From Guillardia theta CCMP2712 (Eukaryota > Protista > Cryptophyta), in assembly GCF_000315625.1 (NCBI RefSeq), contig NW_005434534.1, positions 62,925 through 126,924 on the forward strand: a stretch of DNA of 64,000 nt. The letters run 5' to 3'. Made by a program: the position numbers and the translations under genes. This document shows, piece after piece, positions 11,096 through 48,010 of the stretch (position 1 is its first letter; each line of letters begins with the position of its first letter). A model generated the notes under the pieces. It was not told where the DNA came from, made no database searches, and saw nothing but the letters and a program-made list of their open reading frames with translations.

Positions 11096-12074
11096 CAGAG
11101 ATTTCAAATGTTAGTGGCAAGTTTGAATTCTATTTCTGGAAATTTATTGTTTACAATTCTTTTATAAAATGACAGTAACTTTTAACTAGTAGAGGTGAGA
11201 GATGCGTAGCGGAGGGAGGGAGGGAGGGAGAAGATGAGCATGCATAGTGTTTGTATGCATACACATGCGTACAAGCAGACTGAAAGGCTACATCGTGAAA
11301 CTCGATTATTCATATAACATGGGCAGATAGAAGACCCACCGTTGCAAACTATACTACAGCGTGTGGAAGTTTATACACCTGTTGTGAAAATATAAAGTCG
11401 AAGCTGTGTCCGTTGACATGAGACTTTTGGCGACTCATTTTTTCGGCAGAATGTGATAAGCCTGTTGTTTCACTAGAATTCATTAATGTTCAAATACCAA
11501 AGATCACGCAAGCTGGTGAACGCCATCCTGATGAATGCCGCCAAAGTGAAGAAATCTAAACATGTATGCTCTTGAAAGTTCTCAGTTTTCACGTTCTAAT
11601 TGGCTGTACAAACACACCACAATGTTGGACCAGTCGTGGTACCGACTTCATCTATGCTCACAATCCTATTTCAAAGGGAACACGTGACACCTCATCGACG
11701 GGAGAAGAAGAGATGCATTTTTTACCCCGAGTATGCCATAAACACAATGTTGGGTCTCTGACACCATCAGAGCTCGCTTCGTGACCTTCAGATTCATTAC
11801 CTGAAACCAGGCCAATGTCGGATAAGTTCAAGTAAGTGCATGAAAATCAGTAATCCGATCTCTCTCTCCTTCTCAGCCTTCTTTCGCTACACCATCCTAC
11901 CTAGGATACGCACTCACATGAGATCAACACTTAAAGAAATGCTTTGTTGGCTCTGCTTGAATTCTCCCTCAAACCTCCATTCCCTTCTAGTCACCGGCCT
12001 GTCCTCGTCTTGATGTTGTCTCCCTTCCCTGGACTCCATTTGCTATCTCCCCTGGACTCTCCTCGCCCTTGCTC

Positions 12075-12161
12075 TGTCTGTCTCTATCTCTGTTTCTATC
12101 TCTGTCTCCATCTCTGTCTGTCTGTCTGTCTGCCTGCCTGCCTGCCTGCCTGTCTGTCTGT

Positions 12162-12250
<89 letters not shown>

Positions 12251-12292
12251 TCCTCTGTCTGTCTGTCTCTCCCTCTGTCTGTCTGTCTGTCT
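12075..12292. repeat. (CCTG/TCTG)n compound microsatellite
   Basis: Direct observation. Confidence 0.95.
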
Positions 12293-12612: not shown

Positions 12613-13290
12613 TTAGGCTCGCTTCTCCATTCTTGGTTTCCAGCAGTAGATTCTCTGTGACTTTCGATTCCGATGAGACACATCTTTCTTTGGTTTTGCG
12701 ATGACACAGATAGAATGCCTAGACAAATTTTCAGGAAGTGCTTTGCGAGCATCATTCTCCATGGGCACCAGAGGTTCTCTGTCTGAATGCTGATTGCGAA
12801 AGACAAGTGGCCACCTCAAGCCTGAAGGAGACTTGTTTAGAGCAGACTTAGAACCAGCTGATTTCATCTCCTTGATAGACGAATCTTCGTTTTCAAGCTC
12901 GTCGTCAGTGGCTGAGAAATCCTTCATTCCCATTTGTGGGCTAACAACTTCGTCAAAGTAGACAGATTTGAATTCTTCCCTCAACAATTGCAGTACTCTG
13001 TTCTTATCTCGCTTGATTTCAAGGTGATTCAAACCAACAGATGAATTCAGAGATGCTGTCATTTTGAAGGGAGAGAAGTTCAGAGGATAGCATCCAGCCC
13101 GTGGCTGCCTTCTGTTTCCCGTCTGTGTTGAATTCGAATGTTCGATTTGATATGTTCTCATGTTCGCTTCTCTTCTTTCTCTTTCTAGAACCTCTATAGG
13201 TATGAGCTCTGCATGGTCGCCGGTCATCGTGATACCACAGCCTTGGATGTGTAAGGGTATTGGGGCCTCGTGCGAGCGCCTCTTCTGCAA
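12613..13290 (-). CDS. Unknown-family paralogue 1 (GxYPxxFSP domain), intronless; likely start at the internal Met (MTGDH)
   Basis: RRQPRAGCYPLNFSPFKMT..LNHLEIKRD..FKSVYFDEV aligns with three other ORFs in the window. Confidence 0.7.
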   Translation of the reverse strand: MQKRRSHEAPIPLHIQGCGITMTGDHAELIPIEVLERERREANMRTYQIEHSNSTQTGNRRQPRAGCYPLNFSPFKMTASLNSSVGLNHLEIKRDKNRVLQLLREEFKSVYFDEVVSPQMGMKDFSATDDELENEDSSIKEMKSAGSKSALNKSPSGLRWPLVFRNQHSDREPLVPMENDARKALPENLSRHSICVIAKPKKDVSHRNRKSQRIYCWKPRMEKRA

Positions 13291-13539
13291 GCAATTTGAA
13301 GTAGAGCTGCTGTACAGTTCGATGAAAGCAGCAGCCTAAACAGTGTTGATTAGACGGCAGCTGCTGGAGCAAGACGAAGTAGCTGACTTGACACGTCTGA
13401 AGCAAGGCAGAAGAATGGAGGAGGAGGAAGTCAGAGCAGAGGAGAGGGAGGGGGCAGGTGCTGACGGAGAGCAGAGCTGGCGGCAAGGGAGGAGCAGCAG
13501 ACAGTTGAGGAGGGCGAGGAGTCTTCTTTTTTTTTCAGT

Positions 13540-13700
13540 TGACCCATCTACCCCCTCTTCCCCACGACCCCGAAGGGGGTAGGGTCGTGTGCATCTTGAA
13601 ATGTTGCACAGTTATGATGGGGTAGGGGTAGTCTCAACTTTATACAAAGTTTAGTTAATTCACCCCTCTAATGCCACCCCTACTTCCATTTCCCTGCTGC
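13540..13700. promoter_or_regulatory. GGGGTA/TACCCC motif cluster upstream of paralogue 1
   Basis: ctaccccc, gggggtagggtc, ggggtaggggtag, ccacccctac. Confidence 0.5.
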
Positions 13701-14499
13701 CAGATGAGCCCTCAAAACATGCCATCCCCACTCGCTCTCCTCCTCCTCCTCCCCTCGCCTTGTCCTCAGGCAACGGGGCCCTTCTCCTCCTCTTGCAACA
13801 TTTCCCCTCCTCTCATCTATCTTCGCCCCCACCCCTTCCTCTTTCCTGGCATGCTCGCAGTTGCAATCAGACGGGATCACTTCCTATGACAACACTGGAT
13901 CGAGAGACACTTGTATGAAGTTATCCTAACATTTTCTCACCCTTCATCAATCAACCTTGCAAATTAGCACACCGACACAAATCCCATCCCCTCTTCCCCC
14001 CTTCCCCCTGACTTTCTCCCTCCCCTGCACTTCCTTCTGCTTGCACTTCCACAAGCTTCCATGGATTAGAAGGCTGCAATATTCATCTACCCTATTTCTC
14101 CTGGCTCTTCTCCTGCCCCCATTACCTCGAGTATTTCTGTGACAGCTCAGTTGCTGACCTATGAGAAGAGCACACGCAGTTTGTACTTCGTTCTCTCCTG
14201 TGTATCCTTACTAGTAGATTCAATCTGCGATTGCGTTGCCGCTCCAAGGCTTGTCTTGCAAGAGGAGGCTTGTGAACTGACATGAACTTCGCAAGGTACT
14301 CTGCTGCTGCTAACTTAGCAACAGGTCGAGGGATTTGGTGAGGTTGAGTCACTTGTCAATTGAATCAAGGATTCATTTTGATCTCTCAGTCCTTCAAGAG
14401 TCTTCCATGCTGACACAGAACATCAGTTGTCCGATTGTGTTGTAATTTCCGCAATCTGGGCCCTTCAAGGCTTCGGTTGAATGATTCATTGGCAACCGT

Positions 14500-15060
14500 A
14501 ACGACGGTGCTCCGATGATCTGCTGGCCTGGTGCCGCCGCATGCCATGCTTGAATGCCCGCCGCCGCTCAGATCAGCCAAGTTTCGCCGCACTGGCGAGT
14601 TTCGACAGGCCCTTGAAACGAGTCACTGAGTCGGAGCCGAAGACCCCGGGTGGAGAGTCACGCGGAGTCAGGCTTGATCTTCGGGAGTCAGCGCATCCTA
14701 CTAGGCTAGTAGATTCGTGACTGGGTACCGTAGTGTCACTACTGATGACTAGTCGGACGGTGTGACCGTCCGTCCGGTGCCTTGCCAAGTTGACTGACTC
14801 TGAGTACCGCACTGCACGCCCGGTGACTGGCAGTCACTGACTCAGTGAGTGGCACCGTAGCCTACTCAGTGGGCCGGGACCCCGCGGGTACTACCGTCCC
14901 GTACTAATCGGCGGATCATGGGATGCCGGGCGCCGCGGCGCCGCCGGCCGGGGCCCGGGGCGGCCGGCCCGCGGCTCAGTGGTTGACAGTGACCAGTGAA
15001 ACGAGGCTTCAAGGCTTCCGGCGAGAGGAGCGCGCCTCGTGGCGGCACCGGGCCACCCAA
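14500..15060. promoter_or_regulatory. GC-rich CCGG/TGACTC island upstream of the RPAIN-like gene
   Basis: gagtcactgagtc, gtcactgactcagtgagt, ccggccggggcccggggcggccggcc. Confidence 0.45.
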
Positions 15061-15083
15061 CTAGCTGAGCGAAGAGTAGTACA

Positions 15084-16087
15084 ATGGCGGGAAGGAATGT
15101 GAAGGCAAAAGGTCAAGGACGTGAGAAGATGCTGGAAGAACTGCGAGAGAAGTGCAGGAGGAGACTGAAAGACGAGAGAAAGAACCTTGTTGACACGCTC
15201 AGAGGATTGGCACAAGGCAAGAATGTGCTGGACATGCACCAGGAACAGCTAGAGGCTGTCAGGGATTTTACGAGAAATCTAATCGAAAGAGTGAAAATGG
15301 ACGAGGGTGAGTACCAGGCAGGTCAAGAAGACTGCATGTTTTGCTTGACATTTCCTCACACTCAGGCATAAATGATCAAGAAGTTGGAGCCTTCAAGTCT
15401 ACAGCGGAAGCCTATCCTTCGCTTTATGATACCATTTCAACTTCACCAGATGCAACTGTGGAAGAAGGCGATGAAGAAATGCTTACATTCGAAGAGTACA
15501 TTGACATGATGACTAAGTTGGAAGAAGAGATGATTCTCGATATTCTCGAGACTGGTATGCGATCATTAGCAAGATTGAGGTTTAACGAGTTTGCAGAACA
15601 CAGACAAGCACTCGAATATCTTGGCTATGAGGAAGATGAAGCGTATGATTCCCTTGAAAGTCGTGGTGACGCGGTGAATTCCATACATGTGTTGATGTTT
15701 TGTGGTGATTTTACAATTGACAGGTTGTATGCCCTATCTGCCTCCGCTCAAACATTGAACTATTGTCGAACACATTTTTTTGTGCTTGTGGTATGTTTTG
15801 CTCTCTGGTTTAATTGCTTTGTTTTGACATCTTTCATGCTTGTTCATTGGAAGGTATGAGATTATCTTCCGAAATGGGACAAATATCCTTGGAAGAGCTG
15901 AAAGAGAGCATATCCGAGAGCTACGATGAACATAAAGCAATTTGTGAGCAGAAGCCTTCTTTTTCGATTCAGTCATGTGGAGGTCAAGATATGCTTGTAT
16001 GATGACGTGAATCAGCGGTTTGAATCTCTAATGATACAACAGGTACTTCAATGCCAGCTTTGTGAATTCATGAAGATCGTGGTGTAA
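15084..16087 (+). CDS. RPAIN: RPA-interacting protein (RIP/RPAIN)-like, multi-exon
   Basis: N-terminal LREKCRRRLKDERKNLVDTLR, acidic middle, C-terminal Zn-finger pattern CPIC..FCACG..H..C..KPSF..CQLCEFMKIVV*. Confidence 0.75.
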
Positions 16088-17449
16088 TGTCGCTGGATTT
16101 CTCGTATCTACAACTCAAACATCAACGAAAGTTGTGACCTCGCAGGGAGAACGTTGCACGAGTGGATGCCATGGGAAACAATAGTTGTAAAGGTTCATTT
16201 ATTTCCAACTTCAATCATTCTTTCCCGACGACATTATCTGCCAATTGCACTTTGTCGCACACGAAAACCTTCAGGAGTCAGCAAATAATCACTCACAATT
16301 GCAGTCTAAACGACATGACAGTATGTGATAACTTTGCCAAAACAAAAAGGAATTTGGAATAAGAATTGTAAACCTTTAGTGGTATCACTCTTAAAAACTG
16401 ATGCGCGGTCAAATTGACTTCAGAAAGATCAGCCCAAGCCATTCCGAGATCGCAGAGATCACTTGTTGATTGATAAGTACAGATCAATTTTTCACACGAC
16501 TCTATCTATGTGTATTGTATGTTTGAATTTGTCTATCCCAGTGATCATGCATGGGCTTTATATAGACCAGTGATCATGCATGGGCTTTACATTCAAACAA
16601 ACAACATTAGTTTTCGCTAATTGTACAACATTTGAACATTAGTTTTCGCTCATTGCACAGTAGTGGGTGAGGTAGGGGTCGCGGTATCGATCTTTCATAT
16701 TGCTACTGTTTGGCTATGCGTGTTGTAAAGTACATTCGTATTTGCATAAATGAAAATACAGAAATCATGACAATACGACAGCAATGAGATCTTTTTAATT
16801 ATGGCCGGGTATGGATAAGTATTGTATTCTTTGCCAACCTGTCGACACCAATGAGATTGTTTCATTTATAGATATGGATATAAGTGTTGTAGTCTTCGCA
16901 ACCTGGAACGATACAAACTGTCATGCAACAAGTCCAAGTTTGCAGTGACACTGTATGTGGCAACGGGACTGCAGTATCCTTCTTACTGTAGTTATCAGCG
17001 CAGTATACATACCTGCCTTAGAACAGTTGTTGCATGTGAGCATATCCATATTAGCACCATCATAGCATTGGATGTACAATACTAGAGAAGTTGAGCATCG
17101 ATGCTAGGCGCTATCTTTGGAGCTTGTTTTTCAGGCGTTGTGTTGTAGGCCAACATTGTTTATATCAGCTTCAATAGATAACAGGATCTTCGTCGCAGCG
17201 CTTTAAATAGTTCATCATTGTCTCAACAGATTCGGCAATCCTTAGATGCTTGTTTATTATGTTCGACAACAATATATCCAACATGATGGAATCCTACTTT
17301 GTTAATTCTTATCACTCAAGTCTGCAAGATGCCTGAGCCGGATTCATTGGATTATGGATAGCATGCTCGAATCATACATAATACATAAGTTGATCTATAG
17401 ACAGTCACAGCAGGAGAAGTCCACATGATGATACTATTGTGTCTACAAT

Positions 17450-18046
17450 TCAAATGATGATTGGGCTAAGGTATGCCTGTTGTTGAGTATTGGACATTAG
17501 GAAGGACCAGGGGTTGTGGTCGCATATCCCGAATGACACTGGCTTATCATGACATGTATGCTTCCTCTTTGGCAGCATATGAGTCTGTTTGACACCTCTC
17601 TTCTTTGCTTCATTCCCTGCCTTCGCGTCCATGTTGCCGGCACACCCCCATGTCCCTTCTCCTTGACAGTTGACCCCAGCATTAGAAGTATCTGTTGCAT
17701 TTCCATGAGCATAGATGCCCATACTTGAGTCATAGGCCGACATATTGCTTTCTTCAAAGTAGATAGACTTGAACTCTTGCCTCGTCCTCTCGCGTATCAA
17801 TTGAACATCCTCCTTGATTTCATGTTGATCTAGGCAAGTAAAATGAACCTTTGCCCCCGTCATTTTATAGGGAGAGAAGTTAGCTGGATACTGTCCAGCC
17901 TTCGGCTGCTTACGGTTTACCTTGCCTCGACTGGTTTGCAACACACCTCTATGAGATCTCTTGCTTTTCTTTGATCGTATCGTTGAACACCGAGGCCAAC
18001 CAGGTTTAGGAGCTGCACTTCGGTCATGAGCTCGAGCTTTGCACAT
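17450..18046 (-). CDS. Unknown-family paralogue 2 (GxYPxxFSP domain), intronless
   Basis: RKQPKAGQYPANFSPYKMT..LDQHEIKED..FKSIYFEE. Confidence 0.7.
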   Translation of the reverse strand: MCKARAHDRSAAPKPGWPRCSTIRSKKSKRSHRGVLQTSRGKVNRKQPKAGQYPANFSPYKMTGAKVHFTCLDQHEIKEDVQLIRERTRQEFKSIYFEESNMSAYDSSMGIYAHGNATDTSNAGVNCQGEGTWGCAGNMDAKAGNEAKKRGVKQTHMLPKRKHTCHDKPVSFGICDHNPWSFLMSNTQQQAYLSPIII

Positions 18047-18214
18047 CGTGCTGGGAGTGCGACGACTCTGACGCAGTCGTCACCCTTACGTTGTAGTTAA
18101 ACAACCAAGAGCATTGAGCTCACGCTCCGTCTTCCTGCCTTTGTCCTCCTGCCGCCATCGCTTGAACCGCTTGATCGCCCTCCGTTGATTCGCCGGCGAA
18201 GTGTATGAAGGAGA

Positions 18215-19150
18215 ATTCGGGGGTGGGGGTGGAGTTGAGGAAGAAATCGTCTTCTGCCAGGGGTGGTACGACTGTGTTTGCAGGGTACACGAGAGGATAT
18301 GGACGGGTGGTCGTTGTTAAGTAACATCCAAGGGGGTGGGGTTATAGTTCATGATGGGTACGGTCCGTTGGTCAGTGAGGGGAAGAGGGTACATTGATTT
18401 GAAAGTGTTTGGGGTGCTTAGGTGGTGTATGATCGTAGGATGTCCGTAGCTTCATAGGCGTGGGGGGTATACGTCCTATCCAGGTGGGTGGGGGTGGGAG
18501 ATTCAATAAAGGGGGTGGGTGGGGTAAAGCAGCAAGCAGTGACAGCATGATGTGTCAATCTGAACTCAATCGATTGAAATCAACGATTCAGTTCGATTTA
18601 TTCATTTTTTATCTTTTTTTTGGTTCTAAAACCCTTTTAAGAGCAGATACAGCTTTACCGACTAGAAGTAATTTTAAGTCTAAAAGTGTTGTAAAAGGCG
18701 GGAGGTGAATCGGAGGGACGAGCGGGGATGAGGGGCAAGCATCACGCGGCGCGAAAGGTCAAGGAGGTGACATAAGGCTAAACATGGGGGGTACCATGTG
18801 TGTGCTAGACCATACCCCTAGCCACCCCTACTACCCCCTTACCTGTCACCCTCCACCTGGCCCTTGCTCTTCAACAAACGGTAGGCCGGTAGACCCGTTA
18901 GATACCTGAGGGGGTAGTGGAATCATTCGTGAGGTCCTGGGGGTGGGTGGAGGGCAGAAGGGGTGCATGATGTTTTAAAGATGACGAACTCTAGTGGTGG
19001 CTTACAAGGGGGACTCCGAGGTACGGGTCACCGGAGGCGAGAAACGAGCAAAACAAAGTTCATGGGGTAGGGTACCCATTTGTCCGGGCAGTTGCAGAGA
19101 AGGTAGGGGGTACAGAGAGTGAAGGGGACATGATTCGAGGGTGGGGTGGT
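18215..19150. promoter_or_regulatory. GGGGTR/YACCCC motif cloud between head-to-head paralogues 2 and 3
   Basis: Dozens of ggggtgg/ggggtag/ctacccc units in the divergent spacer. Confidence 0.55.
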
Positions 19151-19425
19151 GCGGCGGCTTCTCCTCTTGTGCTGCAGCGGGGTCAAGCAGCTGCCTCGAC
19201 TTGTCCGGCCGAGGCTCCTCAGCTTTCAGCCCTCTCCTCCTCACTCCCTCGACGACCTCCCTGCCATCGAACGCCAGACAAGTACATCCTTCTTCTGGTT
19301 TCTCTGCCGTCACCTGGCTGGGTTGTCCAACTCTTGAGACCCTGAACGGTTTAAGGTAACACAAGGAGAAATACGACATTTGATCGCCCAACTTTTGTAA
19401 CACAACGAGATCTACATATCAGACG

Positions 19426-20046
19426 ATGTGCGACAACATCCAACCTGTCGCCCTAGATGAGCTAGAACAGGAGCTGTTAATTGGAGAGAGCGAAAAACAC
19501 CAAAGCAGTTGTAACGGCCAGAAGCCAAGACGGATCGCCCCTCGCAAGAGATTGCCCAAGCCCGGAAGCTACCCAGATGACTTCTCGCCCTTCAGGATGA
19601 CATCCGGTGACGGCATGGTCGTCAGCCTCTCTTACCTAGAGATCAAACGCGACCTGCAGACCATCAACGAGCAGTGTCGCGACATGTTCCAGTCCGTCTA
19701 CTACGCTGAGGTGGGTTGCGAGGACATGGAGCAGAGCAGCAAGGGCTCGAAGCCCTGTGCGCTATCGCCAGTGCGAGTACAATCAATCATCGCTGCAAGA
19801 AGAAGCAGAGGGCCGTGCATGAAGCAGCCGACCTCTAGAGCGGAGGAGACACGGATGATCATGGCAGCGGTCAGGGCTTCGTTGCAGGAGATCAGAAGCA
19901 GGCAGCAGGAGGACAATATAAGTGATGAAGAGAAGAGTGCTATCATGCGTATGAGGGCGAGCAAGCGACCGAAAGTAGAAGACAAATTCCCCGGCAACAA
20001 AGTTGCTAGTCAATGGATGGATACTTGTAGCTCGATCGTGATTTAA
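19426..20046 (+). CDS. Unknown-family paralogue 3 (GxYPxxFSP domain plus UIM-like motif), intronless
   Basis: RKRLPKPGSYPDDFSPFRMT..LSYLEIKRD..FQSVYYAEV; EETRMIMAAVRASLQE. Confidence 0.75.
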   Translation: MCDNIQPVALDELEQELLIGESEKHQSSCNGQKPRRIAPRKRLPKPGSYPDDFSPFRMTSGDGMVVSLSYLEIKRDLQTINEQCRDMFQSVYYAEVGCEDMEQSSKGSKPCALSPVRVQSIIAARRSRGPCMKQPTSRAEETRMIMAAVRASLQEIRSRQQEDNISDEEKSAIMRMRASKRPKVEDKFPGNKVASQWMDTCSSIVI

Positions 20047-20300
20047 TCTTTGTGAGTGTGAGTCTACTCTATGGTTAGTTTGTAGATCGTTAAAGCAGGA
20101 AGATGGTTTGTGGAAATGAATTTTGACTGCCATTACAACCCCACACCGCTACACTGAGAGTCAAAGACAGAAGTAGGCACGAGTCTGGAGTGAGCACGGC
20201 CAACTATTCGCACCTGCATTCCTGACATCATCGCCACGGTGTTCCGCAATCACGGGAACAGCGAATCAGAGCTCGTCGCTACTTTGACAACAGACCACGT
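19528..20300 (+). repeat. 773-bp direct duplication, copy A (copy B at 24240..25012)
   Basis: Constant 4712-bp offset, about 4 mismatches by eye. Confidence 0.95.
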
Positions 20301-20759
20301 GAGTACAAGCCTATTATCAAGTATGATTGTGTTGAACGCGACGAGATCGGGTTTCACATGCATGGTTCGTTGAATGCATTTGCTACGTTTCACATCAGTT
20401 GTGTTTTTCATTCAGAATTTTTTTTGATTTGTCCACACTTATGAGTTGCAAAGTCATCATCGTGTTTGGACGCTGCCTTAGCATATAATTTAGAAGGTTT
20501 CTTTCTGCATACGGGCATGCAGTATCAGCGAATGTGAATGGTGCTGTATACATATACATACAACAAGCTTGTCGGGAAGTTGTGGTTGTGCATAACAATG
20601 ATGTTGTACATCAACACGTTGAGCATGTTTTCATAGCATCTGGGCGTTTTAAGGACATGAAATTAAAGATTCACTTGCAAATAAGTCGGAAATGCAAAAT
20701 TTTGAGGCATCAATTGGCTTTGAAGGAATCATTTGCACTTCCACATCTCTCTTATGACA

Positions 20760-21420
20760 TCCTGCTCTCCTCTACTTATTATACTCTGCTTTTCCCTATA
20801 CCCTCTCCTGTCTCGTTACAATCTTGCTCTACTCACTCCATTCGCTCCTAAGTGCCCTAGTGCCTCGGTGCACGATTATATGCACTACGTTATTCCCTGA
20901 GCACTATTACACGGCTCTAAGCGACACCCTCTGCTCTACTGCACTTGTTGAAAGCTACCTACTGTACTGTACTTTGCTCTACACTAGTGTAACAAGCACC
21001 TCTGCTCTCATCTACTCTACTCCACACCCTGTGCTCGGCTGTGTGTAACTCCACTCTACTCTATTAGATTGCCTCTGCTCTGCTCTGCTCTGCTCTACAC
21101 CCTCTGCTCTGCTGTACTACACTGTACCGCTCTACTCGTACACGCTCTGTGTTACTGTACTACACTTGTCTGAACTCCTACACCCTCTGCTTGGTGCACT
21201 TGAAACCTTATTTACTCTGCTATACACCCACTGCTCTTCTGTACCACATCGGCCCGTAAAGACCCGCATGTGCCCTGCTCTATCCCTTCTGTGTGGCACT
21301 ATCTTGGTTCTCCTCTACACGCTCTCGTGCTCAAATCTTCTGCTCTACACCCTCTGCTCTGCTCCACTGCTCCCTTAGCTCCCTCAGCTCCCTAAGCTCC
21401 ACTGCTCTGATCTGGTGCAC
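20760..21420. repeat. Degenerate CT-rich low-complexity satellite (CTCTG/CTACAC units)
   Basis: Recurrent tacaccctctgctct and ctctgctctgctct. Confidence 0.7.
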
Positions 21421-21520
21421 ATGTTTTAAAAACATGTTTTAGGACGGCTTCGCCTCGTCACGTTACCTCAAATAAAAGTCACGTCCCCTCCGCGCGCCCT
21501 CCCCCAGCCTCCGTCTCCCA

Positions 21521-22168
21521 ATGGACAGATGCGGGGAAAGCTGGACGCGAATGTCTGTAACGCTCATTCATGGCACAATGGAACTAAAAGCATTCTATGA
21601 CGTGTGATTGGTTGTGTTTCCAACACCAACATGCCTTCATGTTCCTGGTGTTGGCATATTCATTGCGTCTGCTCTTTTGCCTCTAACTTGTGGTGCCTCA
21701 TTCGAATCTTTTTCGCAGACTTTCATTGCAGAGAGGGAGAACATGGTCTTCACTCGAGAACAATGTCTTCACACTCTTAGTAACACAGATCGACGTACTT
21801 ACGATGACTTTGTCTATTACTTTATTGATCGGTTTTCATTTTTGCAAGCTTCTTGAAAGTACATGGGGGAGGCAATTCTGAGAATGTTTGTTTGTAGGTT
21901 TGGATCAGCTCGACACTACAGGTGTGTAGTCCCCAGAGGACAATGAACATCGTTGGGTATGATGTAAGTCGTTCTGAATAATTCAGTTTTCACTGAATTC
22001 TATGAAGCATCTGAGACACAACTTGACCAAAATTATGGGATGAAAGATTGTCTGCCACAACCCGAACTTATCGAAGCTTTACGGGTTGCAGATGTCTACA
22101 GCGAATGCTCAAGGCGCCTCCGCTGGATCAACACAAAGGTGAAGAGTAGAGATGTAAAGTTTATTTGA
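21521..22168 (+). CDS. Hypothetical multi-exon protein with a hydrophobic segment
   Basis: Plausible exons GVGIFIASALLPLTCGA..FIDRFSFLQ / VWISSTLQ.. / SETQLDQ..LRVADVYSECSRRLRWINTK..*; a decayed copy of the last exon lies downstream. Confidence 0.4.
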
Positions 22169-23309
22169 CAACACAAATACACTGTCGATTCATGGCACAT
22201 ACACAGCAAAGGAAAGGACAGACCACCTTAGCAGTTGTTGACGATCCTTTCATAGTCGAGAAGAACCACCAGGGGTGGTGAGGCTCACGCACGAGCGAGC
22301 ATCCCTCGTGCGTCCGCTTAGATCTGCTGCCTGCTCCTCCTCGAGGTTCAGCCAATCGTACCAGTATGTACACAGTACAGGAGGTACCACCCGTACTGGT
22401 CACACTCTGTCGCCCAACAGGGGTTGTATTGCAGAGGTCCAGTAGCCGTGAGAGCCCTTGGTGTCCTCACCTCGTGGCTGTACGAGAAGACCATAGCTCT
22501 GTTGCTGCTCACTCCTGCTCAATAAAATTCCTTCCTGCGGAGGTTTGAGCTCGCCTTCGCAGAGCTCTGATATTGTCATGTCTGTAAGGGCTAGTGTAAA
22601 GTACATATGATACTTCCCAAGGATAGCATGATTGTTTGCAATAAGTAGCAAGAGCTAGAGCTTGTGTGAAATTGTTAGCAGTGGGGCATAATCTAAGGTT
22701 TTTACTTGAGAGCTGCAGACGTATACAGCAAATGCTAAAAGCGCCTCCACTGAATCGAACAGGAAGGATGCAGCGAGTAAACTGTGAGGCCGATGTAAAT
22801 GATGTCTCTCGTTTCCCACATCTCCGTCTTTACGGTGTGATTTTTCCGCTTTCCTTGACATCCCCGCCAACCCCAACCCCAACAAACACGAGGCCCCTTC
22901 TTCGAACCCGATGGTATCCGCGTGGATCTCTCGCTATAGAGCATCGACCAGTAATTTTCTGTTCCATGCTTTAGTGGAGCACACAGCTATCACATCACAG
23001 TACACGTCCTGCTCCTCAATTCCTTCGACATAGGCGGTCGTGACCTAGAGGAGGAGGCAGCAGCTGCCTCATGGGCCTGACGAGCTCAAGCCTGCATCCG
23101 TCAGCCTCACCCTGCGACCAGGGCTGGAGGCGCAAGTCACAACATGACGGCGGCGAGGGAAGAGTCAAGCATCAGATCGGTCACAATGGCTCTCGGGATG
23201 GAGGGACAGAAAATTTGTTTGTATCAACGAAGAGCCAAATATTTTGCTGTCTTTTGATATTTCGATGGTTCTGAGGCATGCTCATCATTTTTGAACCGAT
23301 AGAGGCAAA

Positions 23310-23605
23310 AGTGAATGTGGGTGGGTGGTCGGGTAGTTGCGGGTAGGGCTCGAGAGGGTGGGTGGGGAGGGAGATTCTGGTGAACTTTGACAGACAAGGG
23401 GTAGGTAGGGGTAAGTTGTGGAGGGGTGCATCAAACTTTATGTTCCTTGAATTCGTGGGGTGGGGTAGATGTGGAAGATTCTCGAGGATACATCAGATGG
23501 GGTAGAACTAGCAATCTTTGCTTGAGTAGGGTGGGTGTCATCCCGTCTGGATGGAGTGGGTAGGGGTCATGCTGTCCCTAGTGGGGGTGGGGGTAGGGTA
23601 GATCG
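23310..23605. promoter_or_regulatory. GGGGTR motif cluster upstream of paralogue 4
   Basis: gggtgggtgg, ggggtaggtaggggta, ggggtggggtag, gggggtgggggtagggtag. Confidence 0.5.
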
Positions 23606-23990
23606 ATCCGAGCACCAAAAAAACTTCTCCTCTCTTCCTCTTCCTCCCTCTCTTCCTCTCCCCCGCTCCCCCGGTCCGTCTGACCTTGTCCGCCCCTTGA
23701 GATTTACCTCCTCCCTTTCAGTTCTTATCGTCACCCTCTCCTTGCTTTCATGACAAACCTGCTCTGTTGATCTCTACCTGTTTCATAAACTGATCGCAGA
23801 GCATCCTCTACCAAACTGCTGGAAAGGGTCTCAGGCCCCAGCGATTCATCGTGTTCAATCAGCAGCTAAAAGCAAGCCTATTGCACAGAAGACGAACTCG
23901 TGAACACAAGCTTCTACCTTCCTCTGTTTATAGAGCTCGTCAGCCCTGTTCTAAACTTCAAGGAAAACAAGGAGCCAAACAAACTTTGGG

Positions 23991-24758
23991 GTGTGCAACT
24001 CAACCGTGTTCATGACTTACATGGATATCAACATGGACATTGACATGCATTTGAGAAAAAGCGAAGTCAACATGCCACAGCAACCTGTCGTCATTGATGT
24101 CAAAAGTAGCCAGATCGAAAACGCCTCGTATAAACCCGCCGTTGCAGCAGACATTGGCGACAGGGCGATTCAACTGAGCAATGCAGAGTTGGCTAAGGAA
24201 ACATCGCAATTGGAACCGAACGAAGCAAGCAAGAGGCCCAGACGGATCGCCCCTCGCAAGAGATTGCCCAAGCCCGGAAGCTACCCAGATGACTTCTCGC
24301 CCTTCAGGATGACATCCGGTGACGGCATGGTCGTCAGCCTCTCTTACCTAGAGATCAAACGCGACCTGCAGACCATCAACGAGCAGTGTCGCGACATGTT
24401 CCAGTCCGTCTACTACGCTGAGGTGGGTTGCGAGGACATGGAGCAGAGCAGCAAGGGCTCGAAGCCCTGTGCGCTATCGCCAGTGCGAGTACAATCAATC
24501 ATCGCTGCAAGAAGAAGCAGAGGGCCGTGCATGAAGCAGCCGACCTCTAGAGCGGAGGAGACACGGATGATCATGGCAGCGGTCAGGGCTTCGTTGCAGG
24601 AGATCAGAAGCAGGCAGCAGGAGGACAATATAAGTGATGAAGAGAAGAGTGCTATCATGCATATGAGGGCGAGCAAGCGACCGAAAGTAGAAGACAAATT
24701 CCCCGGCAACAAAGTTGCTAGTCAATGGATGGATACTTGCAGCTCGATCGTGATTTAA
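23991..24758 (+). CDS. Unknown-family paralogue 4 (near-identical to paralogue 3 except the N-terminus), intronless
   Basis: C-terminal ~172 aa identical to 19426 ORF except one R/H change; unique N-terminus. Confidence 0.75.
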   Translation: MCNSTVFMTYMDINMDIDMHLRKSEVNMPQQPVVIDVKSSQIENASYKPAVAADIGDRAIQLSNAELAKETSQLEPNEASKRPRRIAPRKRLPKPGSYPDDFSPFRMTSGDGMVVSLSYLEIKRDLQTINEQCRDMFQSVYYAEVGCEDMEQSSKGSKPCALSPVRVQSIIAARRSRGPCMKQPTSRAEETRMIMAAVRASLQEIRSRQQEDNISDEEKSAIMHMRASKRPKVEDKFPGNKVASQWMDTCSSIVI

Positions 24759-25012
24759 TCTTTGTGAGTGTGAGTCTACTCTATGGTTAGTTTGTAGATC
24801 GTTAAAGCAGGAAGATGGTTTGTGGAAATGAATTTTGACTGCCATTACAACCCCACACCGCTACACTGAGAGTCAAAGACAGAAGTAGGCACGAGTCTGG
24901 AGTGAGCACGGCCAACTATTCGCACCTGCATTCCTGACATCATCGCCACGGTGTTGCACAATCACGGGAACAGCGAATCAGAGCTCGTCGCTACTTTGAC
25001 AACAGACCACGT
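24240..25012 (+). repeat. 773-bp direct duplication, copy B
   Basis: Matches 19528..20300. Confidence 0.95.
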
Positions 25013-28173: not shown

Positions 28174-28619
28174 AAACTTCCTCCGAGCTCATTTCAAGTC
28201 TTGTTGCGTCACCCTAGCCTGATCCCTACCCTTCTACCTGCAGTCGGCCAAACTGAACAGAAATCTTTGACTGTGATAAGCAGATTAGGAAATTTTCCTT
28301 GAGCATGGTTTTCCTCTCAATAGATTTCCAACCCACACCATAGGATCTTGCCTCAGAACGCATCTACCTACTTACCTCACTTCAACCTGCTCGCTTCTCC
28401 TAATTTCTTCTCCGAACCCATCCAATCCAACGCTCTGTTCTGCTGCCTCGGCATTGCCCTCACCTCACCTCTTCTTTCACCTCTCCTCTCCCTCCCTCCC
28501 TCCCTTCCTCCCTCCCTCCCTCCCTCCCTCCCTCCCCCTCGCTCCCCTCCTCCTCTCCTTCTCTTCTCTCCCCTCGTCAGTCGTCACGAGATCAATCCAG
28601 TAGGGGAACTTTAGCGACG

Positions 28620-29400
28620 AGGAAGAACAACCCCCTCACCCCACCCCTCAACGCCCCACAGCAACCCCACCTTGTTCAAAACAGTACCCCACCCCTCTTC
28701 ATACTACCCCTCCTCTCTACTTCTGAACAGCTGCACTATAAAAAAGTTACTCGGTACCCCTAGGTAGTCACCCTACTAACCCAACAGGCCCTCGTCCATA
28801 TGTACCCCCCACCCCCCTTCTCCATCAGCGAAACCACGTGGATTTGAAAAAGACCCACCCCCCATTTATGTTCCCTTCCACCCCTATCCACATCTGATCA
28901 TTCCCCCACTGAAACTTACACCCCCGAAAGCAAAGATAAGCTCTCTACCCCATTTTTGGCAGAGAAAAGTACCCCTAGCATTGTAATACAACCCCATCAA
29001 ATCAAGGCCTGTTCATTACTGCCCCTACTACCCCACCCACCCATGTTCCCCACGCACAACGCTAAACCACCACCTCATCTCTTCACCACCCCACCACCCC
29101 CCTCTATTCCCCCAGCCCTGTATGCCTCATCCGGTTGCATCTCTATCAACAGAGTGACGGGGGTACCTCAGTCGTGCTGTGGTTCGCGATTCGAAAGAGT
29201 AGGGTGGGTTGATAATGGGTGGGTGGGTCCCTCCACCTTCATTCCCGTGGGGTCAATGAAATACAGAGTGACTATTTTCTGGGGTGGGGTAGAGTTCTAG
29301 TCCGGGTGGGGTGGATGATTTCCAAGGGTAGGGTAGTAACATATAAGAGAATTGCAAGGCCATGGATGTGACCACCAAGGATGGGACCATCCCCTCGAGA
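28620..29400. promoter_or_regulatory. YACCCC/GGGGTR cloud in the divergent promoter of the methyltransferase and carrier genes
   Basis: Dense tacccc/cacccc units switching to gggtgg/ggggta in the right half. Confidence 0.55.
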
Positions 29401-29703
29401 GCATGCAGAGAGTGCCGGTCAAGAAGTAGCTAGGTTGCAGAAGACTTAGGAGAGAAAGTGAGGAGAAGAGGAGAAGGAGCATGAGAGAAGATAAAGCTTG
29501 AGAAGATGGTTCCTCATACACTTCTCTTCCGTGACTTCAGACTTGTTGATTGAGGCCATCTGAGGTATTCGGAGCCATACAAGCGTGCAGTTGAGAAAAT
29601 GTTGTTTCATCGAGAGTTGTAGTAGGGTGTGACGAGCCGCCAAGACGCTAGAAATACGTGGCTGGGCTTAAACTTTGCCGAGAAAGACGCAAAGACATTC
29701 GAA

Positions 29704-31125: not shown

Positions 31126-32611
31126 TCAACAAGAGCAGTTGCTAGCTCCTTGGGTACCTCGAGAGCTGAAAAAAGCACTGAGTCTCGATCACGAGAGAGA
31201 GGCAAGCTTACGCAAGATTCAACCCCGAGACCTCGTTGTTAACCAGATGTGGAGAATCTAAGATCTTTTGTACAAGTTCCTCGAACGCTAGAAGAAGAAC
31301 AGATCAGGTGAGCAATGGAAACACATCAACAGATACCTTGCTGAATTCCAGTCTTCGCTTTTGCACTGCACTCAATGAATAGCTACGACATTTCATATCA
31401 CACATTCAAACAAGCCAAGAGCAAGCGCACCATCCCACGATTTCGAGCGAATTCTATTCCATCCGCACGAGTCACTTCGCGATTTGCCTTATCGATCTTA
31501 TTGCCCACCAAGAGTTTGACAACCTGTGCATGCGCTATCAACTGCCTCGCAACCAAAGTAGCAGATGCGATAGTACTCCGTCTCGGTTTGTGTACATGTC
31601 CACCTCTTTCAACCACTGCAGCTTGTTACAAACATGTGAACCAGAGATTTCGAGCTTCACCTGCTCAAGATTCTCGAACGTTTCCTTGCGAGTCACATCG
31701 TAAACTAGTAAAACATCAGCCATGTTCCTCATAAGATTTTTCTACCAAGAATAACGCCCTGGGCACCACGGTAATAGCTACTAGTCAAAGTGCGGAAACG
31801 CTCCTGCCCTGAAGATCCTTGCAGATAAGCAAACAAGTAGACATGTTGAATAAAACAGAAGATCTTGAGCTAGACTGACCGGCTGTGTCCCAGATCGTCA
31901 GTTTCACTTTCTTCCCTTCCACGTCGATTGATTTGACCTTCACAAACAATCACGAATAGCTTGCTCAATACCCAAGGAGATGAGATCGGGACCTTGAAAT
32001 CAACCCCTATGGTGGCAGGCTGATCCGTAGCAAAGGAATCATCCGTAAATCGAAGTAGAATGCTTGACTTGCCAACACCACTATTCCATGTAATTTGTCA
32101 AGCGCTTTTCGCGGGGTGTGGTTGGGATATTGGATGGAGAACAGGAGAAGGATGAATAACAGTATTCCCTGTTTCACAGCATGCTATTCAAGCAGAAGAG
32201 CCAGCAGACTCTGATTTCCATGAAAGTTGATGCAGGCACACGCATACAAGTAAGAACAGTGAGGGTCGAGCTCAGTTGATCATTTCAAATTCGAAAAATG
32301 GAAAGATGTAGCAAGTGTCTCAGTTTGAGGAGGTACTGTCAGAGCATTATTGGATGATGGTGAAGAAGTTTAGTATCACATCGGTCGATTTTCAGCATGT
32401 GGCGGGGTGAATTTCAAAAAAGTAGGTGTAGGCTATGGAGAAGGTGCCGGTGATGGGAGGAGGAGAGAGGACGAGGAAAAAGACAATGAAACAGCGGAGA
32501 AAGAGGGAAATGAGGGAGGAAGGTTGGTGAGGCATGCAGGATGGAGGGGTACCTGTCTCCTGTGAGAAGGAGCTTGAAGCGATGATCGAACGCGTCGCTC
32601 TCCTTGGCCAT
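31126..32611 (-). CDS. RAB18: Rab18 (RabC) small GTPase, multi-exon
   Basis: [75 protein letters not shown]-terminal CSC. Confidence 0.93.
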
Positions 32612-32619
32612 GGCTGCCA

Positions 32620-33000
32620 AATCTGCCACCCACGTGTAGAGGCTGCAAAGCAGGGGTAGTAGGGTCTTGGGTGGGTACAGTACCAGGCCGTCGGGGGTAC
32701 TGAGTCGAAAGGGGTACTGGGAGGAGAGATGGAGGGGTACCTGGTATGCTGCAATAAGATTCAAAAAGTTTAGGAGGGAGGCGGAGGGGTGGTTTTGATA
32801 TTTGAGGGGTAGGGATGGGAAGGGGTACAGAGGTAGGGGTGGGTCTTTCCTTGCGATTGTCATAGAGGCACGATGGGAGCACGTGGGGTAGGGTGAAGAG
32901 AAGGGGTGGTGGGGTAAGTGACATGTGAGGGTACGGGTCCAGCCATTCAAAAAGAGTAGATCAGGAGGCTGAGGGGTCCCCTCGTATGGGAGGGGTGGAG
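32620..33000. promoter_or_regulatory. GGGGTR motif cluster upstream of Rab18
   Basis: ggggtagtaggg, gggggtac (several), ggggtaggg, ggggtggtgggggtaag. Confidence 0.5.
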
Positions 33001-43539: not shown

Positions 43540-44618
43540 TCAGTTTCCACCTTGCGCCTTCTTATCGGCCGCTTGCTTGAGCCACATTTGCTGGTAAAGT
43601 ATCATCAACATCCTTCACGGCTCTCAGTCCCTCGTTCCCCTTACCATGCGTGCCTCCACTTCCTCCTGGCGCTTCTTCTCCTCCTCATCTCTCTGTCTGC
43701 GCCATTCCTCCTGCAACAAACATGAGTCGCCCCGCTTGCCATGCTCTTTCCTGCTCTACCTGCTCTGCATCCGATTCGATGGGCCCGCCCATCACCTTGC
43801 CGCCTCCGCTAGAGAAGACGTCGGCTGCTACATCCTTGGCTGATTCCTTTGGTGGTCCCCAGGTGCCTGCCTGCACCGAATACGAGGGCTTCACGTCCTC
43901 AATCACGTTGCCGAAGGCCTGACAAGTGCATCGGTCAGCCTTCTTTGGCCTCCTACCCGAGGACAAGAAAGCTCACATCCTTCACGACACCCTCCTTCTT
44001 CTTGCGCATGGCCATGTACTCCTCCCATGATCCAGGAGCACCCATATCAGACGTAGGGATCTTCAACGGGTCGACGATGACCCTTCCGGAGCGCTGTAAA
44101 AAAAATATCAGAATGTGGGGAACGCAAGAGCACAAGACTCACAGGGTCACGGTCGCCCTCCTTCAGCCTGCCACTGGTATCGAGACCGCTTCTAGCAGCG
44201 ATGCCTGGCCGGAGGAACGTCAAACCATGGGATGCCATCACAGTATAAAACAGTCGCAACACTTGATACCTTTCTCCTCTGCAATCTTCTTGGCTTCCGC
44301 AAGTCGCTGTTCCACGCGGGACTTGATCTGATCGGACCTGTTGATCTGGAACGAATAGTTTCAAGTCTGACAGACGCATTCTCTCTCTCATCTAACCTGT
44401 CCACGATCTGCCCCAGCCCCGTCGTACTCCTCCTCCTCACTCTTTTTGTCCCAGTCCCAGTCCACCATGCGGAGGGAGGTCAAGCTTGGACGGAGAGCAG
44501 GCTTGCATGCATGGTTAGCCAGCCTGGTGGGAGAAGAGGAGGAGAGGGAGGACAGAGGCGAGGTGATGAAGCCTGAGGCCAGAGCGGCGGAGGAGAGGAG
44601 GAGGAATCGTCTGTGCAT
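43540..44618 (-). CDS. Hypothetical protein with bipartite plastid-type leader, multi-exon
   Basis: MHRRFLLLSSAALASG-FITSPLSSLSSSSPTRL..SLRM leader; continuous spliced frame ending KKAQGGN*. Confidence 0.6.
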
Positions 44619-45837
44619 GTCAGATGCCCTTAAACCCAGTACCCCACCCCCTTCTTGACTCTAACAAGCGGGGTCCACCCCTGAACATACCCCCTTAAAA
44701 TCATAGGAGTCAGGGGGTAGTATATGAGGGGGGTGGGTCCTCCAGGAAGAACAATCTCGAACTACTTTTACTCAACTCGTTATAGTTGCAACAACCTGCT
44801 GGCCCGGCCGGCCCGGGCGAAGAGCGTCAGGTCATTCCCCTACTTTCTCGTGCACCGCTATGCAGGACGCGACAAGTGCAGGCCTCAACTGACCCCCCAG
44901 AGAACCTCCTGCTCAAAGCTACAAAGGTGTCTAGCTCCAGCTTCAGCTCCAGCTCAGGCTCCAGCTCCTATCTTTGCCAGCACTACCGCCTACTAGCTGC
45001 TTTTCTTCCCCCTTGATCCCGTTTCGTGGTGAGGGTATTTTTGCTGGCTGCTATTCTCTTGTATCTTCCACTCGAGAAGTTCCAAGCGTTCCAAGGTAAA
45101 TTTCTACACGTAGATTTCATCAACGCATGTCAGCATATGCCTCCCCGCTATCCCATAGCGGTAGAGGTCTACACAGCATGCGAAAGTAAGTTGGATCGCG
45201 AACAATCCGCATTCGAGCGAATGAGTTGCCGCTTGCGACATAAAGATCCATACATGCCTCTTCTCGTTGAGACCAAACTGTTGTATCTTGTTCCATGATT
45301 CTGACATGCTCCGTTCTTTAGGAGCGCAAGATCCAACAGTGTTTTGCCTTGGATAGATATTGTACATATGGTTTCATTGGGTTGTATTACAAAAAAGATA
45401 TTTGATTGCAAAACTCTCAAATTCCAAACTTTTTCGAGAAGTTCTTGACAATGTCATCGAGTTTTTGAAAGAACCCTTGATTGGTTTGTATCTGGGATTT
45501 CGTTTCGATCAGCACGCTACGTTGAGAAGGAGAGAATTACCTCAATGTCCGTAGATTTTTCCAAGTCTTGATGAGAGTTCAAGTCAGCTCAAAGAAATCA
45601 TTCAGCTGCATGTACCTTTCACGGGCTGGATAGGATTTTTTGGGTTCAATCCCTCTGCAAAAGATAGTGTCAAAAGGTAAATTTATCACTTTGCAAATGT
45701 CAATTGTTACCGCCTGCTGTTGGCTGATCCTGCACTATGGGATCCTTACCGGAGATTTCAACGTCATTCAGCTTCGTTTCAGTAGTTGCTTCAGGAACAG
45801 GCGCCTTCATCGTCTGCTTCTTCTTCTGTAATCATAA

Positions 45838-47530: not shown

Positions 47531-47549
47531 TTTCCCGCCGCCTATGATG

Positions 47550-48010
47550 ATGATACCCCTCCCTTCTCCTCACCCCACACCCCAGCAACTCAGACACCCC
47601 ACCCACTTTCATACCCACCCCGTGGGACCAATTCTTGTAAATGATGAATCACCCCTACAAAACACTATCAAAACCACCCGTTAAAATTCATTTTTCAATC
47701 ACCCCACCCTCAGTAAATCCTTGGTAACACTCACGTTCCCCCACTCGCAAACCCTACCGACTTACTCCGAAGAACCCCCTCTCATCCCCATTTCATCACG
47801 GGTGGGGTGGGTATTTTTTATCCACCATGGTCACCGGGTGCCGGACCGGGCCGGGCCGGGCCTCGCACTGAGTCGGGCGAGTCGAAGAGCGGTCAGCAGG
47901 TTATGAGCCTCTGATTGGGTTGTTGTCGGAGTTCTCGGGTCAAGAATGAGGAAGGGGGGGTACTCCTTGGTAAGATTTTACTCACAAGGGGGGTAGGGGT
48001 AATCACAGAT
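47550..48010. promoter_or_regulatory. YACCCC/GGGGTR cloud plus CCGG island in a divergent promoter (47530 gene / myosin)
   Basis: caccccac, tacccaccc, gggtggggtgggta, ccgggccgggccgggcc, gggggtaggggta. Confidence 0.5.

What the first reader, a model, noticed from the sequence alone, without database searches (positions are those of the whole stretch)
12613..24758. Cluster of four intronless paralogues sharing an unrecognised ~55-aa domain
Seen: ORFs at 12613-13290(-), 17450-18046(-), 19426-20046(+) and 23991-24758(+) share R[KR]xP[KR][AP]GxYPx[ND]FSP[FY][KR]MT-x(7-8)-LxxxEIKxD-x(11)-F[KQ]S[VI]Y[FY]xE, while their flanks are highly diverged. Copies 1, 3 and 4 also have a similar upstream acidic helix (GDHAELIPIEVLERE / CDNIQPVALDELEQE / GDRAIQLSNAELAKE). 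All are intronless among intron-dense neighbours, copies 2 and 3 are head-to-head, and each has a GGGGTR cloud upstream. I do not recognise the family. The LxxxEIxxD helix only weakly recalls the Sds3/BRMS1 C-terminal helix and plant DUF1639. Inference: a lineage-specific expanding family of small nuclear regulators.
Basis: partly seen in the sequence, partly recalled or inferred. Interest (0 to 1): 0.78.

Follow-up and report, generated by a model that had tools for sequence, protein, structure and literature searches.

The report
Undescribed cryptophyte small-protein family cluster
The four small genes are real, expressed and conserved members of an undescribed protein family seen so far only in cryptophyte algae; the family is built from a new 55-residue core plus, in its full form, a ubiquitin-interaction-like helix, and its job is not yet known.

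Summary
The four ORFs share a gap-free core of about 55 aa. Within-genome E-values are 9e-11 to 6e-9, and paralogues are 43-47% identical in the core. The genome is Guillardia theta CCMP2712.

- A profile search of 1.84 billion proteins found 79 cluster representatives.
- Every named one is a cryptophyte (Guillardia, Hanusia, Rhodomonas, Cryptomonas); the rest are environmental.
- G. theta has only five loci: these four plus one on another contig.

The genes are real.
- Copies 2 and 3 each match an unspliced transcript contig.
- Copies 1, 2 and 3 each have a Hanusia phi transcript orthologue.
- dN/dS against Hanusia is 0.11 in the core.

Copies 3 and 4 share a 784-bp, 99.1% identical tract that starts inside the ORF.

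Nothing matches in Pfam, PDB sequences or by fold. AlphaFold gives isolated helices, not a globular fold.

New here: most members have a third conserved helix that resembles a ubiquitin-interaction motif. Profile-profile probability against G. theta's own UIMs is 83%. Copies 3 and 4 keep this helix; copies 1 and 2 lost it.

"Nuclear regulator" remains inference. The scan noted this same stretch once more in an overlapping window, and noted other, different cryptophyte-only small families elsewhere in this genome.

The parts
12613..13227 (-). Copy 1 coding sequence (204 aa from the ATG). It has the N-terminal acidic helix and the core. The UIM-like helix is degenerate.
   Evidence: ORF. Protein P0001. 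Colinear over its whole length with Hanusia phi P0002: 51% overall, 80% in the core; alignment.
12940..13119 (-). Copy 1 core (60 aa window around the conserved ~55 aa).
   Evidence: Coordinates; alignments.
13168..13212 (-). Copy 1 N-terminal acidic helix motif.
   Evidence: Translation; family-wide motif.
17201..18195 (-). Copy 2 transcript. It is unspliced, with a 149-nt 5' UTR and a 249-nt 3' UTR.
   Evidence: Transcript contig L007 (JGI sample 3300017164) matches at 100% over all 995 nt in one block.
17450..18046 (-). Copy 2 coding sequence (198 aa). It has the core only: no acidic helix and no UIM-like helix.
   Evidence: Hanusia orthologue P0008.
17741..17920 (-). Copy 2 core.
19184..20133 (+). 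Copy 3 transcript (contig end to contig end). It is unspliced, with a 242-nt 5' UTR.
   Evidence: Transcript contig L029 matches at 100% over 950 nt. It matches copy 4 at only 99.2% over 617 nt.
19426..20046 (+). Copy 3 coding sequence (206 aa) with the full architecture: acidic helix, core and UIM-like helix.
   Evidence: Hanusia orthologue P0006. dN/dS.
19441..19509 (+). Copy 3 N-terminal helix.
   Evidence: AlphaFold helix at residues 10-28, block pLDDT up to 92. Translation.
19540..19719 (+). Copy 3 core.
19828..19893 (+). Copy 3 UIM-like helix.
   Evidence: Translation. AlphaFold helix 138-164 with block pLDDT 90-97. dN/dS 0.028. hhalign against G. theta UIMs.
24021..24758 (+). Copy 4 coding sequence (245 aa from the ATG). 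It has its own N-terminus with an acidic helix. The body is identical or nearly identical to copy 3.
24168..24218 (+). Copy 4 N-terminal acidic helix motif.
24252..24431 (+). Copy 4 core.
24540..24605 (+). Copy 4 UIM-like helix.
19517..20300 (+). Shared tract, copy 3 side. It starts at codon 31-32 and ends 254 nt past the stop codon.
   Evidence: blastn gives 99.1% over 784 nt. There are seven differences, three of them in the first 11 nt.
24229..25012 (+). Shared tract, copy 4 side.
18220..19148 (.). Divergent promoter region of copies 2 and 3, holding two GGGGTR clouds (18220-18526 and 18911-19148). The clouds end about 25-40 nt from the 5' ends of the two transcript contigs.

Best explanation
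Shown: the four ORFs are genuine nuclear genes of Guillardia theta. They belong to an undescribed family of small (about 200 aa), mostly disordered proteins found so far only in cryptophyte algae. The family's full architecture has five parts. (1) An optional N-terminal acidic helix. (2) A basic KKRK-like stretch. (3) The ~55-aa core: an extended PxxGxYP...FSP[YF] segment followed by one amphipathic helix ending in SxYFxE. (4) A short basic linker. (5) A second long helix whose centre reads like a ubiquitin-interaction motif. Copies 3 and 4 keep the full architecture, copy 1 has lost the last helix, and copy 2 keeps only the core. Inferred: the proteins are adaptors. The core is a fold-on-binding docking module for an unknown conserved partner. 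The UIM-like helix binds ubiquitin or a ubiquitin-like protein. The basic stretch sends the protein to the nucleus. On this reading, copies 1 and 2 would bind the partner without the ubiquitin link and could act as competitors.
For: Real genes: transcripts exist for copies 2 and 3. Hanusia phi transcript orthologues exist for copies 1, 2 and 3. dN/dS against Hanusia is 0.105 in the core, 0.028 in the UIM-like helix and 0.22 in the linker. Family range: 79 representatives at E<=1e-3 and 41 at <=1e-10; named members are only cryptophytes. Architecture: column counts over 57 members show invariant P, G, Y, P, S, D and E in the core and a conserved EE-R-[RK]-Q-[LI]-x-A-A-[LIM]-x-A-S helix. Disorder with isolated helices: AlphaFold pTM is 0.30 for the whole protein and 0.41 for the core alone, with helices at pLDDT 90-97. 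UIM-likeness: hhalign of the family helix against 11 G. theta UIM-containing segments taken from the Pfam UIM matches (eight of the eleven are at or above the 21-bit cut-off, three at 18.7-20.9 bits) gives probability 83%, P=8.7e-6 and score 18.9 in the expected register. A column-permuted null gives 5.7 +/- 1.4, maximum 11.1, with 0 of 150 reaching the observed score.
Against: The Pfam UIM model does not pass: 1 of 57 members at E=0.16, and the window loci are not among the 20 best UIM matches in the genome. The acidic block that precedes a canonical UIM carries two basic residues here. No binding, localisation or partner data exist. Two of the four window copies lack the helix, so any ubiquitin link is not essential to the core. 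Taxon names were available for only some of the 30 clusters looked up, so restriction to cryptophytes is not proven.
Confidence: 0.4

Rival explanations
1. The family is the cryptophyte counterpart of the small disordered cyclin-dependent-kinase inhibitors (Kip/KRP/SIM type). The core helix plus its aromatic end would play the part of the inhibitor domain.
For: These are small, fast-evolving, disordered proteins with short conserved motifs and a basic stretch. No gene in the G. theta genome reaches the Pfam CDI cut-off; the best match is 18.2 bits over 15 positions. From memory, the spacing of conserved positions in the core helix resembles the first half of plant KRP inhibitor domains.
Against: Pfam CDI matches only 1 of 57 members, at E=0.68, which is chance level across 24,736 models. 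No conserved PLxGxYEW-type motif follows the helix in the sequences. A UIM-like helix is not a feature of known CDK inhibitors.
Confidence: 0.08
2. The first half of the core is only a nuclear import signal (a classical basic signal plus a PY-type signal for transportin). The family has no specific docking partner.
For: A KKRK-like run lies directly before the core in 46 of 57 members. P-[YF] is nearly invariant at core positions 55-56.
Against: A basic residue at the required distance before P-Y is present in only a minority, and the window copies lack it. Invariant G, Y-P, D and SxYFxE, plus thirteen conserved hydrophobic positions over 55 aa, are far more than an import signal needs. dN/dS is 0.105 over the whole core.
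Confidence: 0.1
3. The core is an acidic-aromatic histone- or chromatin-binding peptide, like the extended histone-binding segments of Spt2 or MCM2.
For: The top rows of the exhaustive structure comparison include Spt2-H3/H4 and the MCM2 histone-binding domain. The core ends in Y-F followed by acidic residues.
Against: Those matches have Z 2.1-2.2, which is chance level by the tool's own notes. There is no sequence similarity to them.
Confidence: 0.05
4. The ORFs are relics of a mobile element or virus, or are non-functional ORFs conserved by recent duplication only.
For: The genes are clustered and intron-free, and copies 3 and 4 share a 99% identical tract.
Against: There are only five loci in 87 Mb. 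No flanking repeats were found and the spacers are not paralogous. There are one-to-one Hanusia orthologues, purifying selection and transcripts. Relatives in environmental genomic contigs carry a spliceosomal-type intron inside the core. The fifth G. theta copy has a ~50-nt intron.
Confidence: 0.02

Closest known systems
UIM-bearing ubiquitin receptors and adaptors (Rpn10/S5a, Vps27/Hrs, epsin type; Pfam PF02809)
   Same: A single long helix has the hydrophobic-x-x-Ala-hydrophobic-x-x-Ser centre, preceded by Glu-Glu, and sits in an otherwise disordered protein. Profile-profile similarity to G. theta's own UIMs is 83% probability.
   Different: It fails the Pfam cut-off. The two residues before the helix centre are basic rather than acidic. 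The rest of the protein, the 55-aa core and the N-terminal helix, has no counterpart in any known UIM protein.
Small disordered CDK inhibitors of plants and animals (Pfam CDI, PF02234; SIAMESE-related proteins)
   Same: Similar size, disorder, fast-evolving flanks, short conserved helix-plus-aromatic motif and basic stretch.
   Different: No HMM support. The kinase-binding motif after the helix is missing, and a UIM-like helix is present.
Other cryptophyte-only small intron-free protein families noted by this scan in the same genome
   Same: Clustered, small, disordered, no Pfam match, and shared with Hanusia (notes by other agents, not checked here).
   Different: This family is low-copy in G. 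theta (5 loci). It reaches beyond Guillardia/Hanusia to Rhodomonas and Cryptomonas, and it has a defined multi-motif architecture. A look-up by sequence found no overlap with those notes.

Membership tests
UIM (Pfam PF02809) | Helix centre: hydrophobic-x-x-Ala-hydrophobic-x-x-Ser | tested here: met
   Present in 42 of 57 members. Present in copies 3 and 4 and in the C15 copy. Absent from copies 1 and 2.
UIM (Pfam PF02809) | Run of acidic residues directly before the helix centre | tested here: not met
   The family has E-E-R-[RK]-Q: two basic residues at the positions that are acidic in G. theta's own UIMs.
UIM (Pfam PF02809) | Score at or above Pfam's cut-off | tested here: not met
   1 of 57 members, at E=0.16. 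The window loci are not among the 20 best genome matches, which go down to 14.4 bits against a cut-off of 21.
UIM (Pfam PF02809) | Profile-level similarity to accepted UIMs | tested here: met
   hhalign probability 83%, P=8.7e-6, correct register. 0 of 150 column permutations reach the observed score.
UIM (Pfam PF02809) | Binds ubiquitin | not testable with these tools
   Needs a binding assay.
CDI, cyclin-dependent kinase inhibitor (Pfam PF02234) | HMM match to the inhibitor domain | tested here: not met
   1 of 57 members at E=0.68.
   No match at E<=1 to 10 in any window copy, Hanusia orthologue or the 57 members.
DUF1645 (Pfam PF07816; lead from the language-model atlas) | HMM match to the family model | tested here: not met
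   The atlas feature score of 0.89 is below the tool's 0.9 line. There is no Pfam match.
PY-type nuclear import signal | Basic region followed by [RKH]-x(2-5)-P-Y | tested here: inconclusive
   P is present in 51 and Y/F in 56 of 57 members, with a basic run before it in 46 of 57. The [RKH] at the right distance is present in only a minority and in none of the window copies.

The most novel reading that the evidence does not exclude
The family is a new class of ubiquitin-family reader restricted to cryptophytes. A charge-reversed UIM (basic instead of acidic before the helix centre) would read a ubiquitin-like modifier other than ubiquitin, and the new 55-aa core would couple it to a conserved nuclear partner. 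Helix-less paralogues (copies 1 and 2) would act as natural competitors. Alternatively, the family supplies the CDK-inhibitor function for which G. theta has no recognisable gene.
Probability: 0.1. Interest if true: 0.6.

Novelty: new variant of a known kind. Interest (0 to 1): 0.38.

Why it matters
Cryptophytes are ecologically important algae with four genomes per cell, and a large share of their nuclear genes have no annotation. This family is a well-defined, conserved, expressed and low-copy example with a clear motif architecture. It also has one testable handle, the ubiquitin-interaction-like helix, so it is a tractable entry point into cryptophyte-specific regulation. As it stands, it adds a new protein family and a new conserved core motif to the catalogue. 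It does not yet reveal a new mechanism.

Tried and rejected
- **Pfam.** Scans of the four ORFs, the cores alone, the Hanusia orthologues and all 57 aligned members gave no consistent family.
- **PDB sequences.** A profile search at E<=10 found nothing.
- **Fold searches.** Foldseek on the full copy 3 model found nothing. The exhaustive structure comparison with the core model gave a best Z of 2.5.
- **Language-model atlas.** It gave a DUF1645 lead at 0.89 and, for a typical member, nothing above 0.78. Neither was supported.
- **Word-indexed protein search.** It found only Guillardia/Hanusia and a few environmental members. The exhaustive profile search was needed to see the family.
- **Origin of copy 4.** I tested whether copy 4 is an old paralogue, orthologous to Hanusia P0011, whose body was overwritten by copy 3. 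Its N-terminus shows no significant similarity to P0011. Partial duplication and gene conversion therefore remain equally open.
- **Spacers.** I asked whether the ~4.7-4.8 kb spacing reflects a duplicated multi-gene unit. The spacers are not paralogous.
- **A UIM model built from G. theta's own UIMs.** Scored against single family members, the median was 1.7 bits, against 1.4 bits for the 99th percentile of shuffled sequences. That is weak, so I moved to a profile-profile test.
- **Literature.** No paper mentions the fifth copy's gene identifier, and none describes the family.
- The search for related loci with the 64-row alignment failed for lack of a conserved stretch; the 7-row alignment worked. 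I derived the coordinates from residue numbers instead and checked them with translate by reference.
- **Missing DNA.** DNA for the Hanusia orthologues of copies 1 and 2 is not on record, so dN/dS was computed for copy 3 only.
Full report
**What is there.** The window holds four ORFs at the stated places. They share a gap-free core of about 55 residues. Under eukaryotic rules the likely coding sequences are:
- copy 1: 12613-13227 (-)
- copy 2: 17450-18046 (-)
- copy 3: 19426-20046 (+)
- copy 4: 24021-24758 (+)

A six-frame search of the whole assembly with copy 1 recovers copy 2 at E=9.3e-11 and copies 3/4 at 4-6e-9. Core identity to copy 1 is 47% for copy 2 and 43% for copy 3. The similarity is therefore real. 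Copies 3 and 4 are not independent witnesses. A tract of 784 nt (19517-20300 and 24229-25012) is 99.1% identical. It begins at codon 31-32 of copy 3 and runs 254 nt past the stop codon. Upstream of the tract the two genes differ, although each encodes its own version of the acidic helix.

**Whose genome.** The assembly has 87.1 Mb in 669 contigs. A fifth family member on another contig is, letter for letter, GUITHDRAFT_104006 of Guillardia theta CCMP2712, annotated 'hypothetical protein'. Neighbouring ORFs carry only parts of their Pfam domains (myosin head, CMAS methyltransferase), as expected of multi-exon genes. A published table gives G. theta 5.3 introns per gene. It also shows that 21% of genes have no intron, and that the intron size mode is 47 nt (PMC6260743). 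Being intron-free is therefore not remarkable in itself.

**Real genes.**
- Transcript contig L007 matches 18195-17201 at 100% in one block, covering copy 2 with both UTRs.
- Transcript contig L029 matches 19184-20133 at 100%, but copy 4 only at 99.2%. Copies 2 and 3 are therefore transcribed, unspliced, and diverge from a 988-nt shared upstream region.
- No transcript with the exact product of copy 1 or copy 4 is on record. This does not show that they are silent.
- Copies 1, 2 and 3 each have a transcript-derived orthologue in Hanusia phi: P0002, P0008 and P0006.
- In a tree of 56 members, each pair joins with SH-aLRT 96-100. The three lineages are therefore older than the Guillardia/Hanusia split.
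- Conservation is concentrated. Copy 1 against P0002 is 51% identical overall but 80% in the core. Copy 3 against P0006 is 87% in the core.
- Nucleotide sequence is available only for the copy 3 orthologue. There, Nei-Gojobori dN/dS is 0.105 in the core, 0.028 in the third helix and 0.22 in the linker, while the two ends are unalignable.

**How wide the family is.** The word-indexed search saw almost only Guillardia and Hanusia. The exhaustive profile search of 1.84 billion representatives found 79 proteins at E<=1e-3 and 41 at E<=1e-10. I looked up thirty of these clusters. Every one that carries a taxon name is a cryptophyte: G. theta, H. phi, Rhodomonas abbreviata, R. salina and the colourless Cryptomonas paramecium. 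The rest are environmental assemblies. With the 57-member profile, the G. theta genome yields only five loci: the four here and the one on contig C15. This is a low-copy family, not an expansion.

**Introns.** The C15 copy has an intron of about 50 nt just before the core. Four environmental genomic contigs have the core split between its two halves, with a change of frame about 200 nt apart. Several database proteins stop at, or read through, that same point. The '55-aa domain' is thus encoded by two exons in some relatives.

**Architecture.** Counts over 57 aligned members and inspection of all sequences give five parts:
1. An N-terminal motif of the type [VI]-x-[VI]-[SP]-x-x-E-L-E-x-E-R. 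It lies about 30 residues before the core in at least 22 of 73 members.
2. A basic run, often KKRK-like.
3. The core, with invariant P, G, Y, P and S in its first half, one invariant D in the helix, and S-x-Y-[FY]-x-E at the end.
4. A basic linker with a near-invariant P.
5. A helix reading E-E-R-[RK]-Q-[LI]-x-A-A-[LIM]-x-A-S in most members.

Some environmental members add a C-terminal C-x-G-x-I-x-R-T-G motif. In the window, copies 3 and 4 have parts 1 to 5. Copy 1 has parts 1 to 3 and a degenerate part 5, and its lineage has gained its own conserved basic C-terminus. Copy 2 has parts 2 and 3 only.

**Structure.** AlphaFold with the 57-row alignment gives copy 3 a mean pLDDT of 72 and a pTM of 0.30. 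It predicts confident isolated helices at residues 10-28, 70-87, 138-164 and 167-179, with nothing globular. The core alone, with 64 rows, gives pLDDT 79.6 and pTM 0.41: one helix and an extended N-terminal half. Foldseek finds nothing. The exhaustive structure comparison peaks at Z 2.5. A profile search of PDB sequences is empty even at E<=10. This is the picture of a disordered protein whose conserved pieces fold on a partner.

**The third helix.** By eye it looks like a ubiquitin-interaction motif, so I tested that reading in four ways.
- The Pfam UIM model does not accept it. One of 57 members matches at E=0.16, and the window loci are not among the 20 best UIM matches of the genome.
- I fetched nine loci holding the genome's best Pfam UIM matches, six of them with a match over the 21-bit cut-off. 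In those UIMs, acidic residues come straight before the helix centre. The family has two basic residues there.
- A small HMM built from those UIMs scores single family members only weakly.
- A profile-profile comparison aligns the two in the expected register. It gives probability 83%, P=8.7e-6 and score 18.9. A column-permuted null gives 5.7 +/- 1.4 with a maximum of 11.1 (0 of 150). The family's other two helices score 11.0 and 3.6.

I therefore call it UIM-like, with a charge-reversed N-terminal cap. I do not file it as a Pfam UIM.

**Function.** Nothing here measures function. The best-supported reading has three steps, all inferred: an adaptor whose core docks on an unknown conserved partner, whose third helix reads ubiquitin or a relative, and whose basic run takes it to the nucleus. 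I put about 0.4 on that statement as a whole, and about 0.9 on the part that was shown (a real, expressed, constrained, cryptophyte-restricted family). Four rivals were considered.
- **A CDK-inhibitor-like role.** G. theta has no gene over the Pfam CDI cut-off. However, the family's CDI signal is at chance level.
- **A bare nuclear import signal.** The core is too strongly conserved for that.
- **A histone-binding peptide.** Only chance-level structural rows support it.
- **A mobile-element relic.** Copy number, orthology, selection and introns all contradict it.

- The GGGGTR clouds are real. They end 25-40 nt from the 5' ends of the two transcript contigs.
- Equally dense clouds lie between other genes of the window, so they look like a general upstream feature of this genome rather than a family mark.
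- The recollections of Sds3/BRMS1 and DUF1639 found no support.

**Earlier notes of the scan.** The same stretch was noted once more in an overlapping window. A look-up by sequence was blank. Other agents have reported several different cryptophyte-only small intron-free families in this genome. I did not check those reports. They suggest that such families are common here, which tempers the interest score.

**Verdict.** This is a sound observation of a genuinely undescribed family. Interest 0.38.

Noticed in passing
window 18220-18526, 18911-19148, 13549-13835, 23398-23595; also about 28500-29500, 32500-33000, 44500-45000 and 47500-48000: Dense clouds of GGGGTR (up to 13 per 500 nt, against a window mean of 0.9) lie in gene-upstream or divergent intergenic regions. 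At copies 2 and 3 they end 25-40 nt from the transcript contigs' 5' ends. In that divergent region, and upstream of copy 4, they are G-rich on the + strand whatever the gene's direction; upstream of copy 1 both strands carry hits. This may be a general promoter-side element of G. theta.
   Followed up: partly
L006:333-380 (Hanusia phi transcript) and L012:about 1449-1497 (G. theta contig C15): The Hanusia transcript of the copy 3 orthologue has an in-frame 48-nt GT...AG segment just before the basic run. The G. theta C15 paralogue has its ~50-nt intron at the same place. The Hanusia segment may be a retained intron. The 3/4 shared tract in the window also starts at this point.
   Followed up: partly
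whole genome G000: No locus reaches the Pfam cut-off for the cyclin-dependent kinase inhibitor domain. The best match is 18.2 bits over 15 positions, on contig C58. G. theta may lack a recognisable Kip/KRP-type inhibitor.
   Followed up: no
window 12049-12256: A long (CTGT/CTGC)n microsatellite lies directly downstream of copy 1. It produces spurious ORFs on both strands.
   Followed up: no
window 15341-15859 (+): A 172-aa ORF lies between copies 1 and 2. It has an acidic, helix-rich sequence, no Pfam match and no relation to the family.
   Followed up: no
L023-L026 (environmental genomic contigs): Family relatives have the core split by an intron between its two halves. Several database 'proteins' of the family are truncated at this intron or read through it.
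   Followed up: partly
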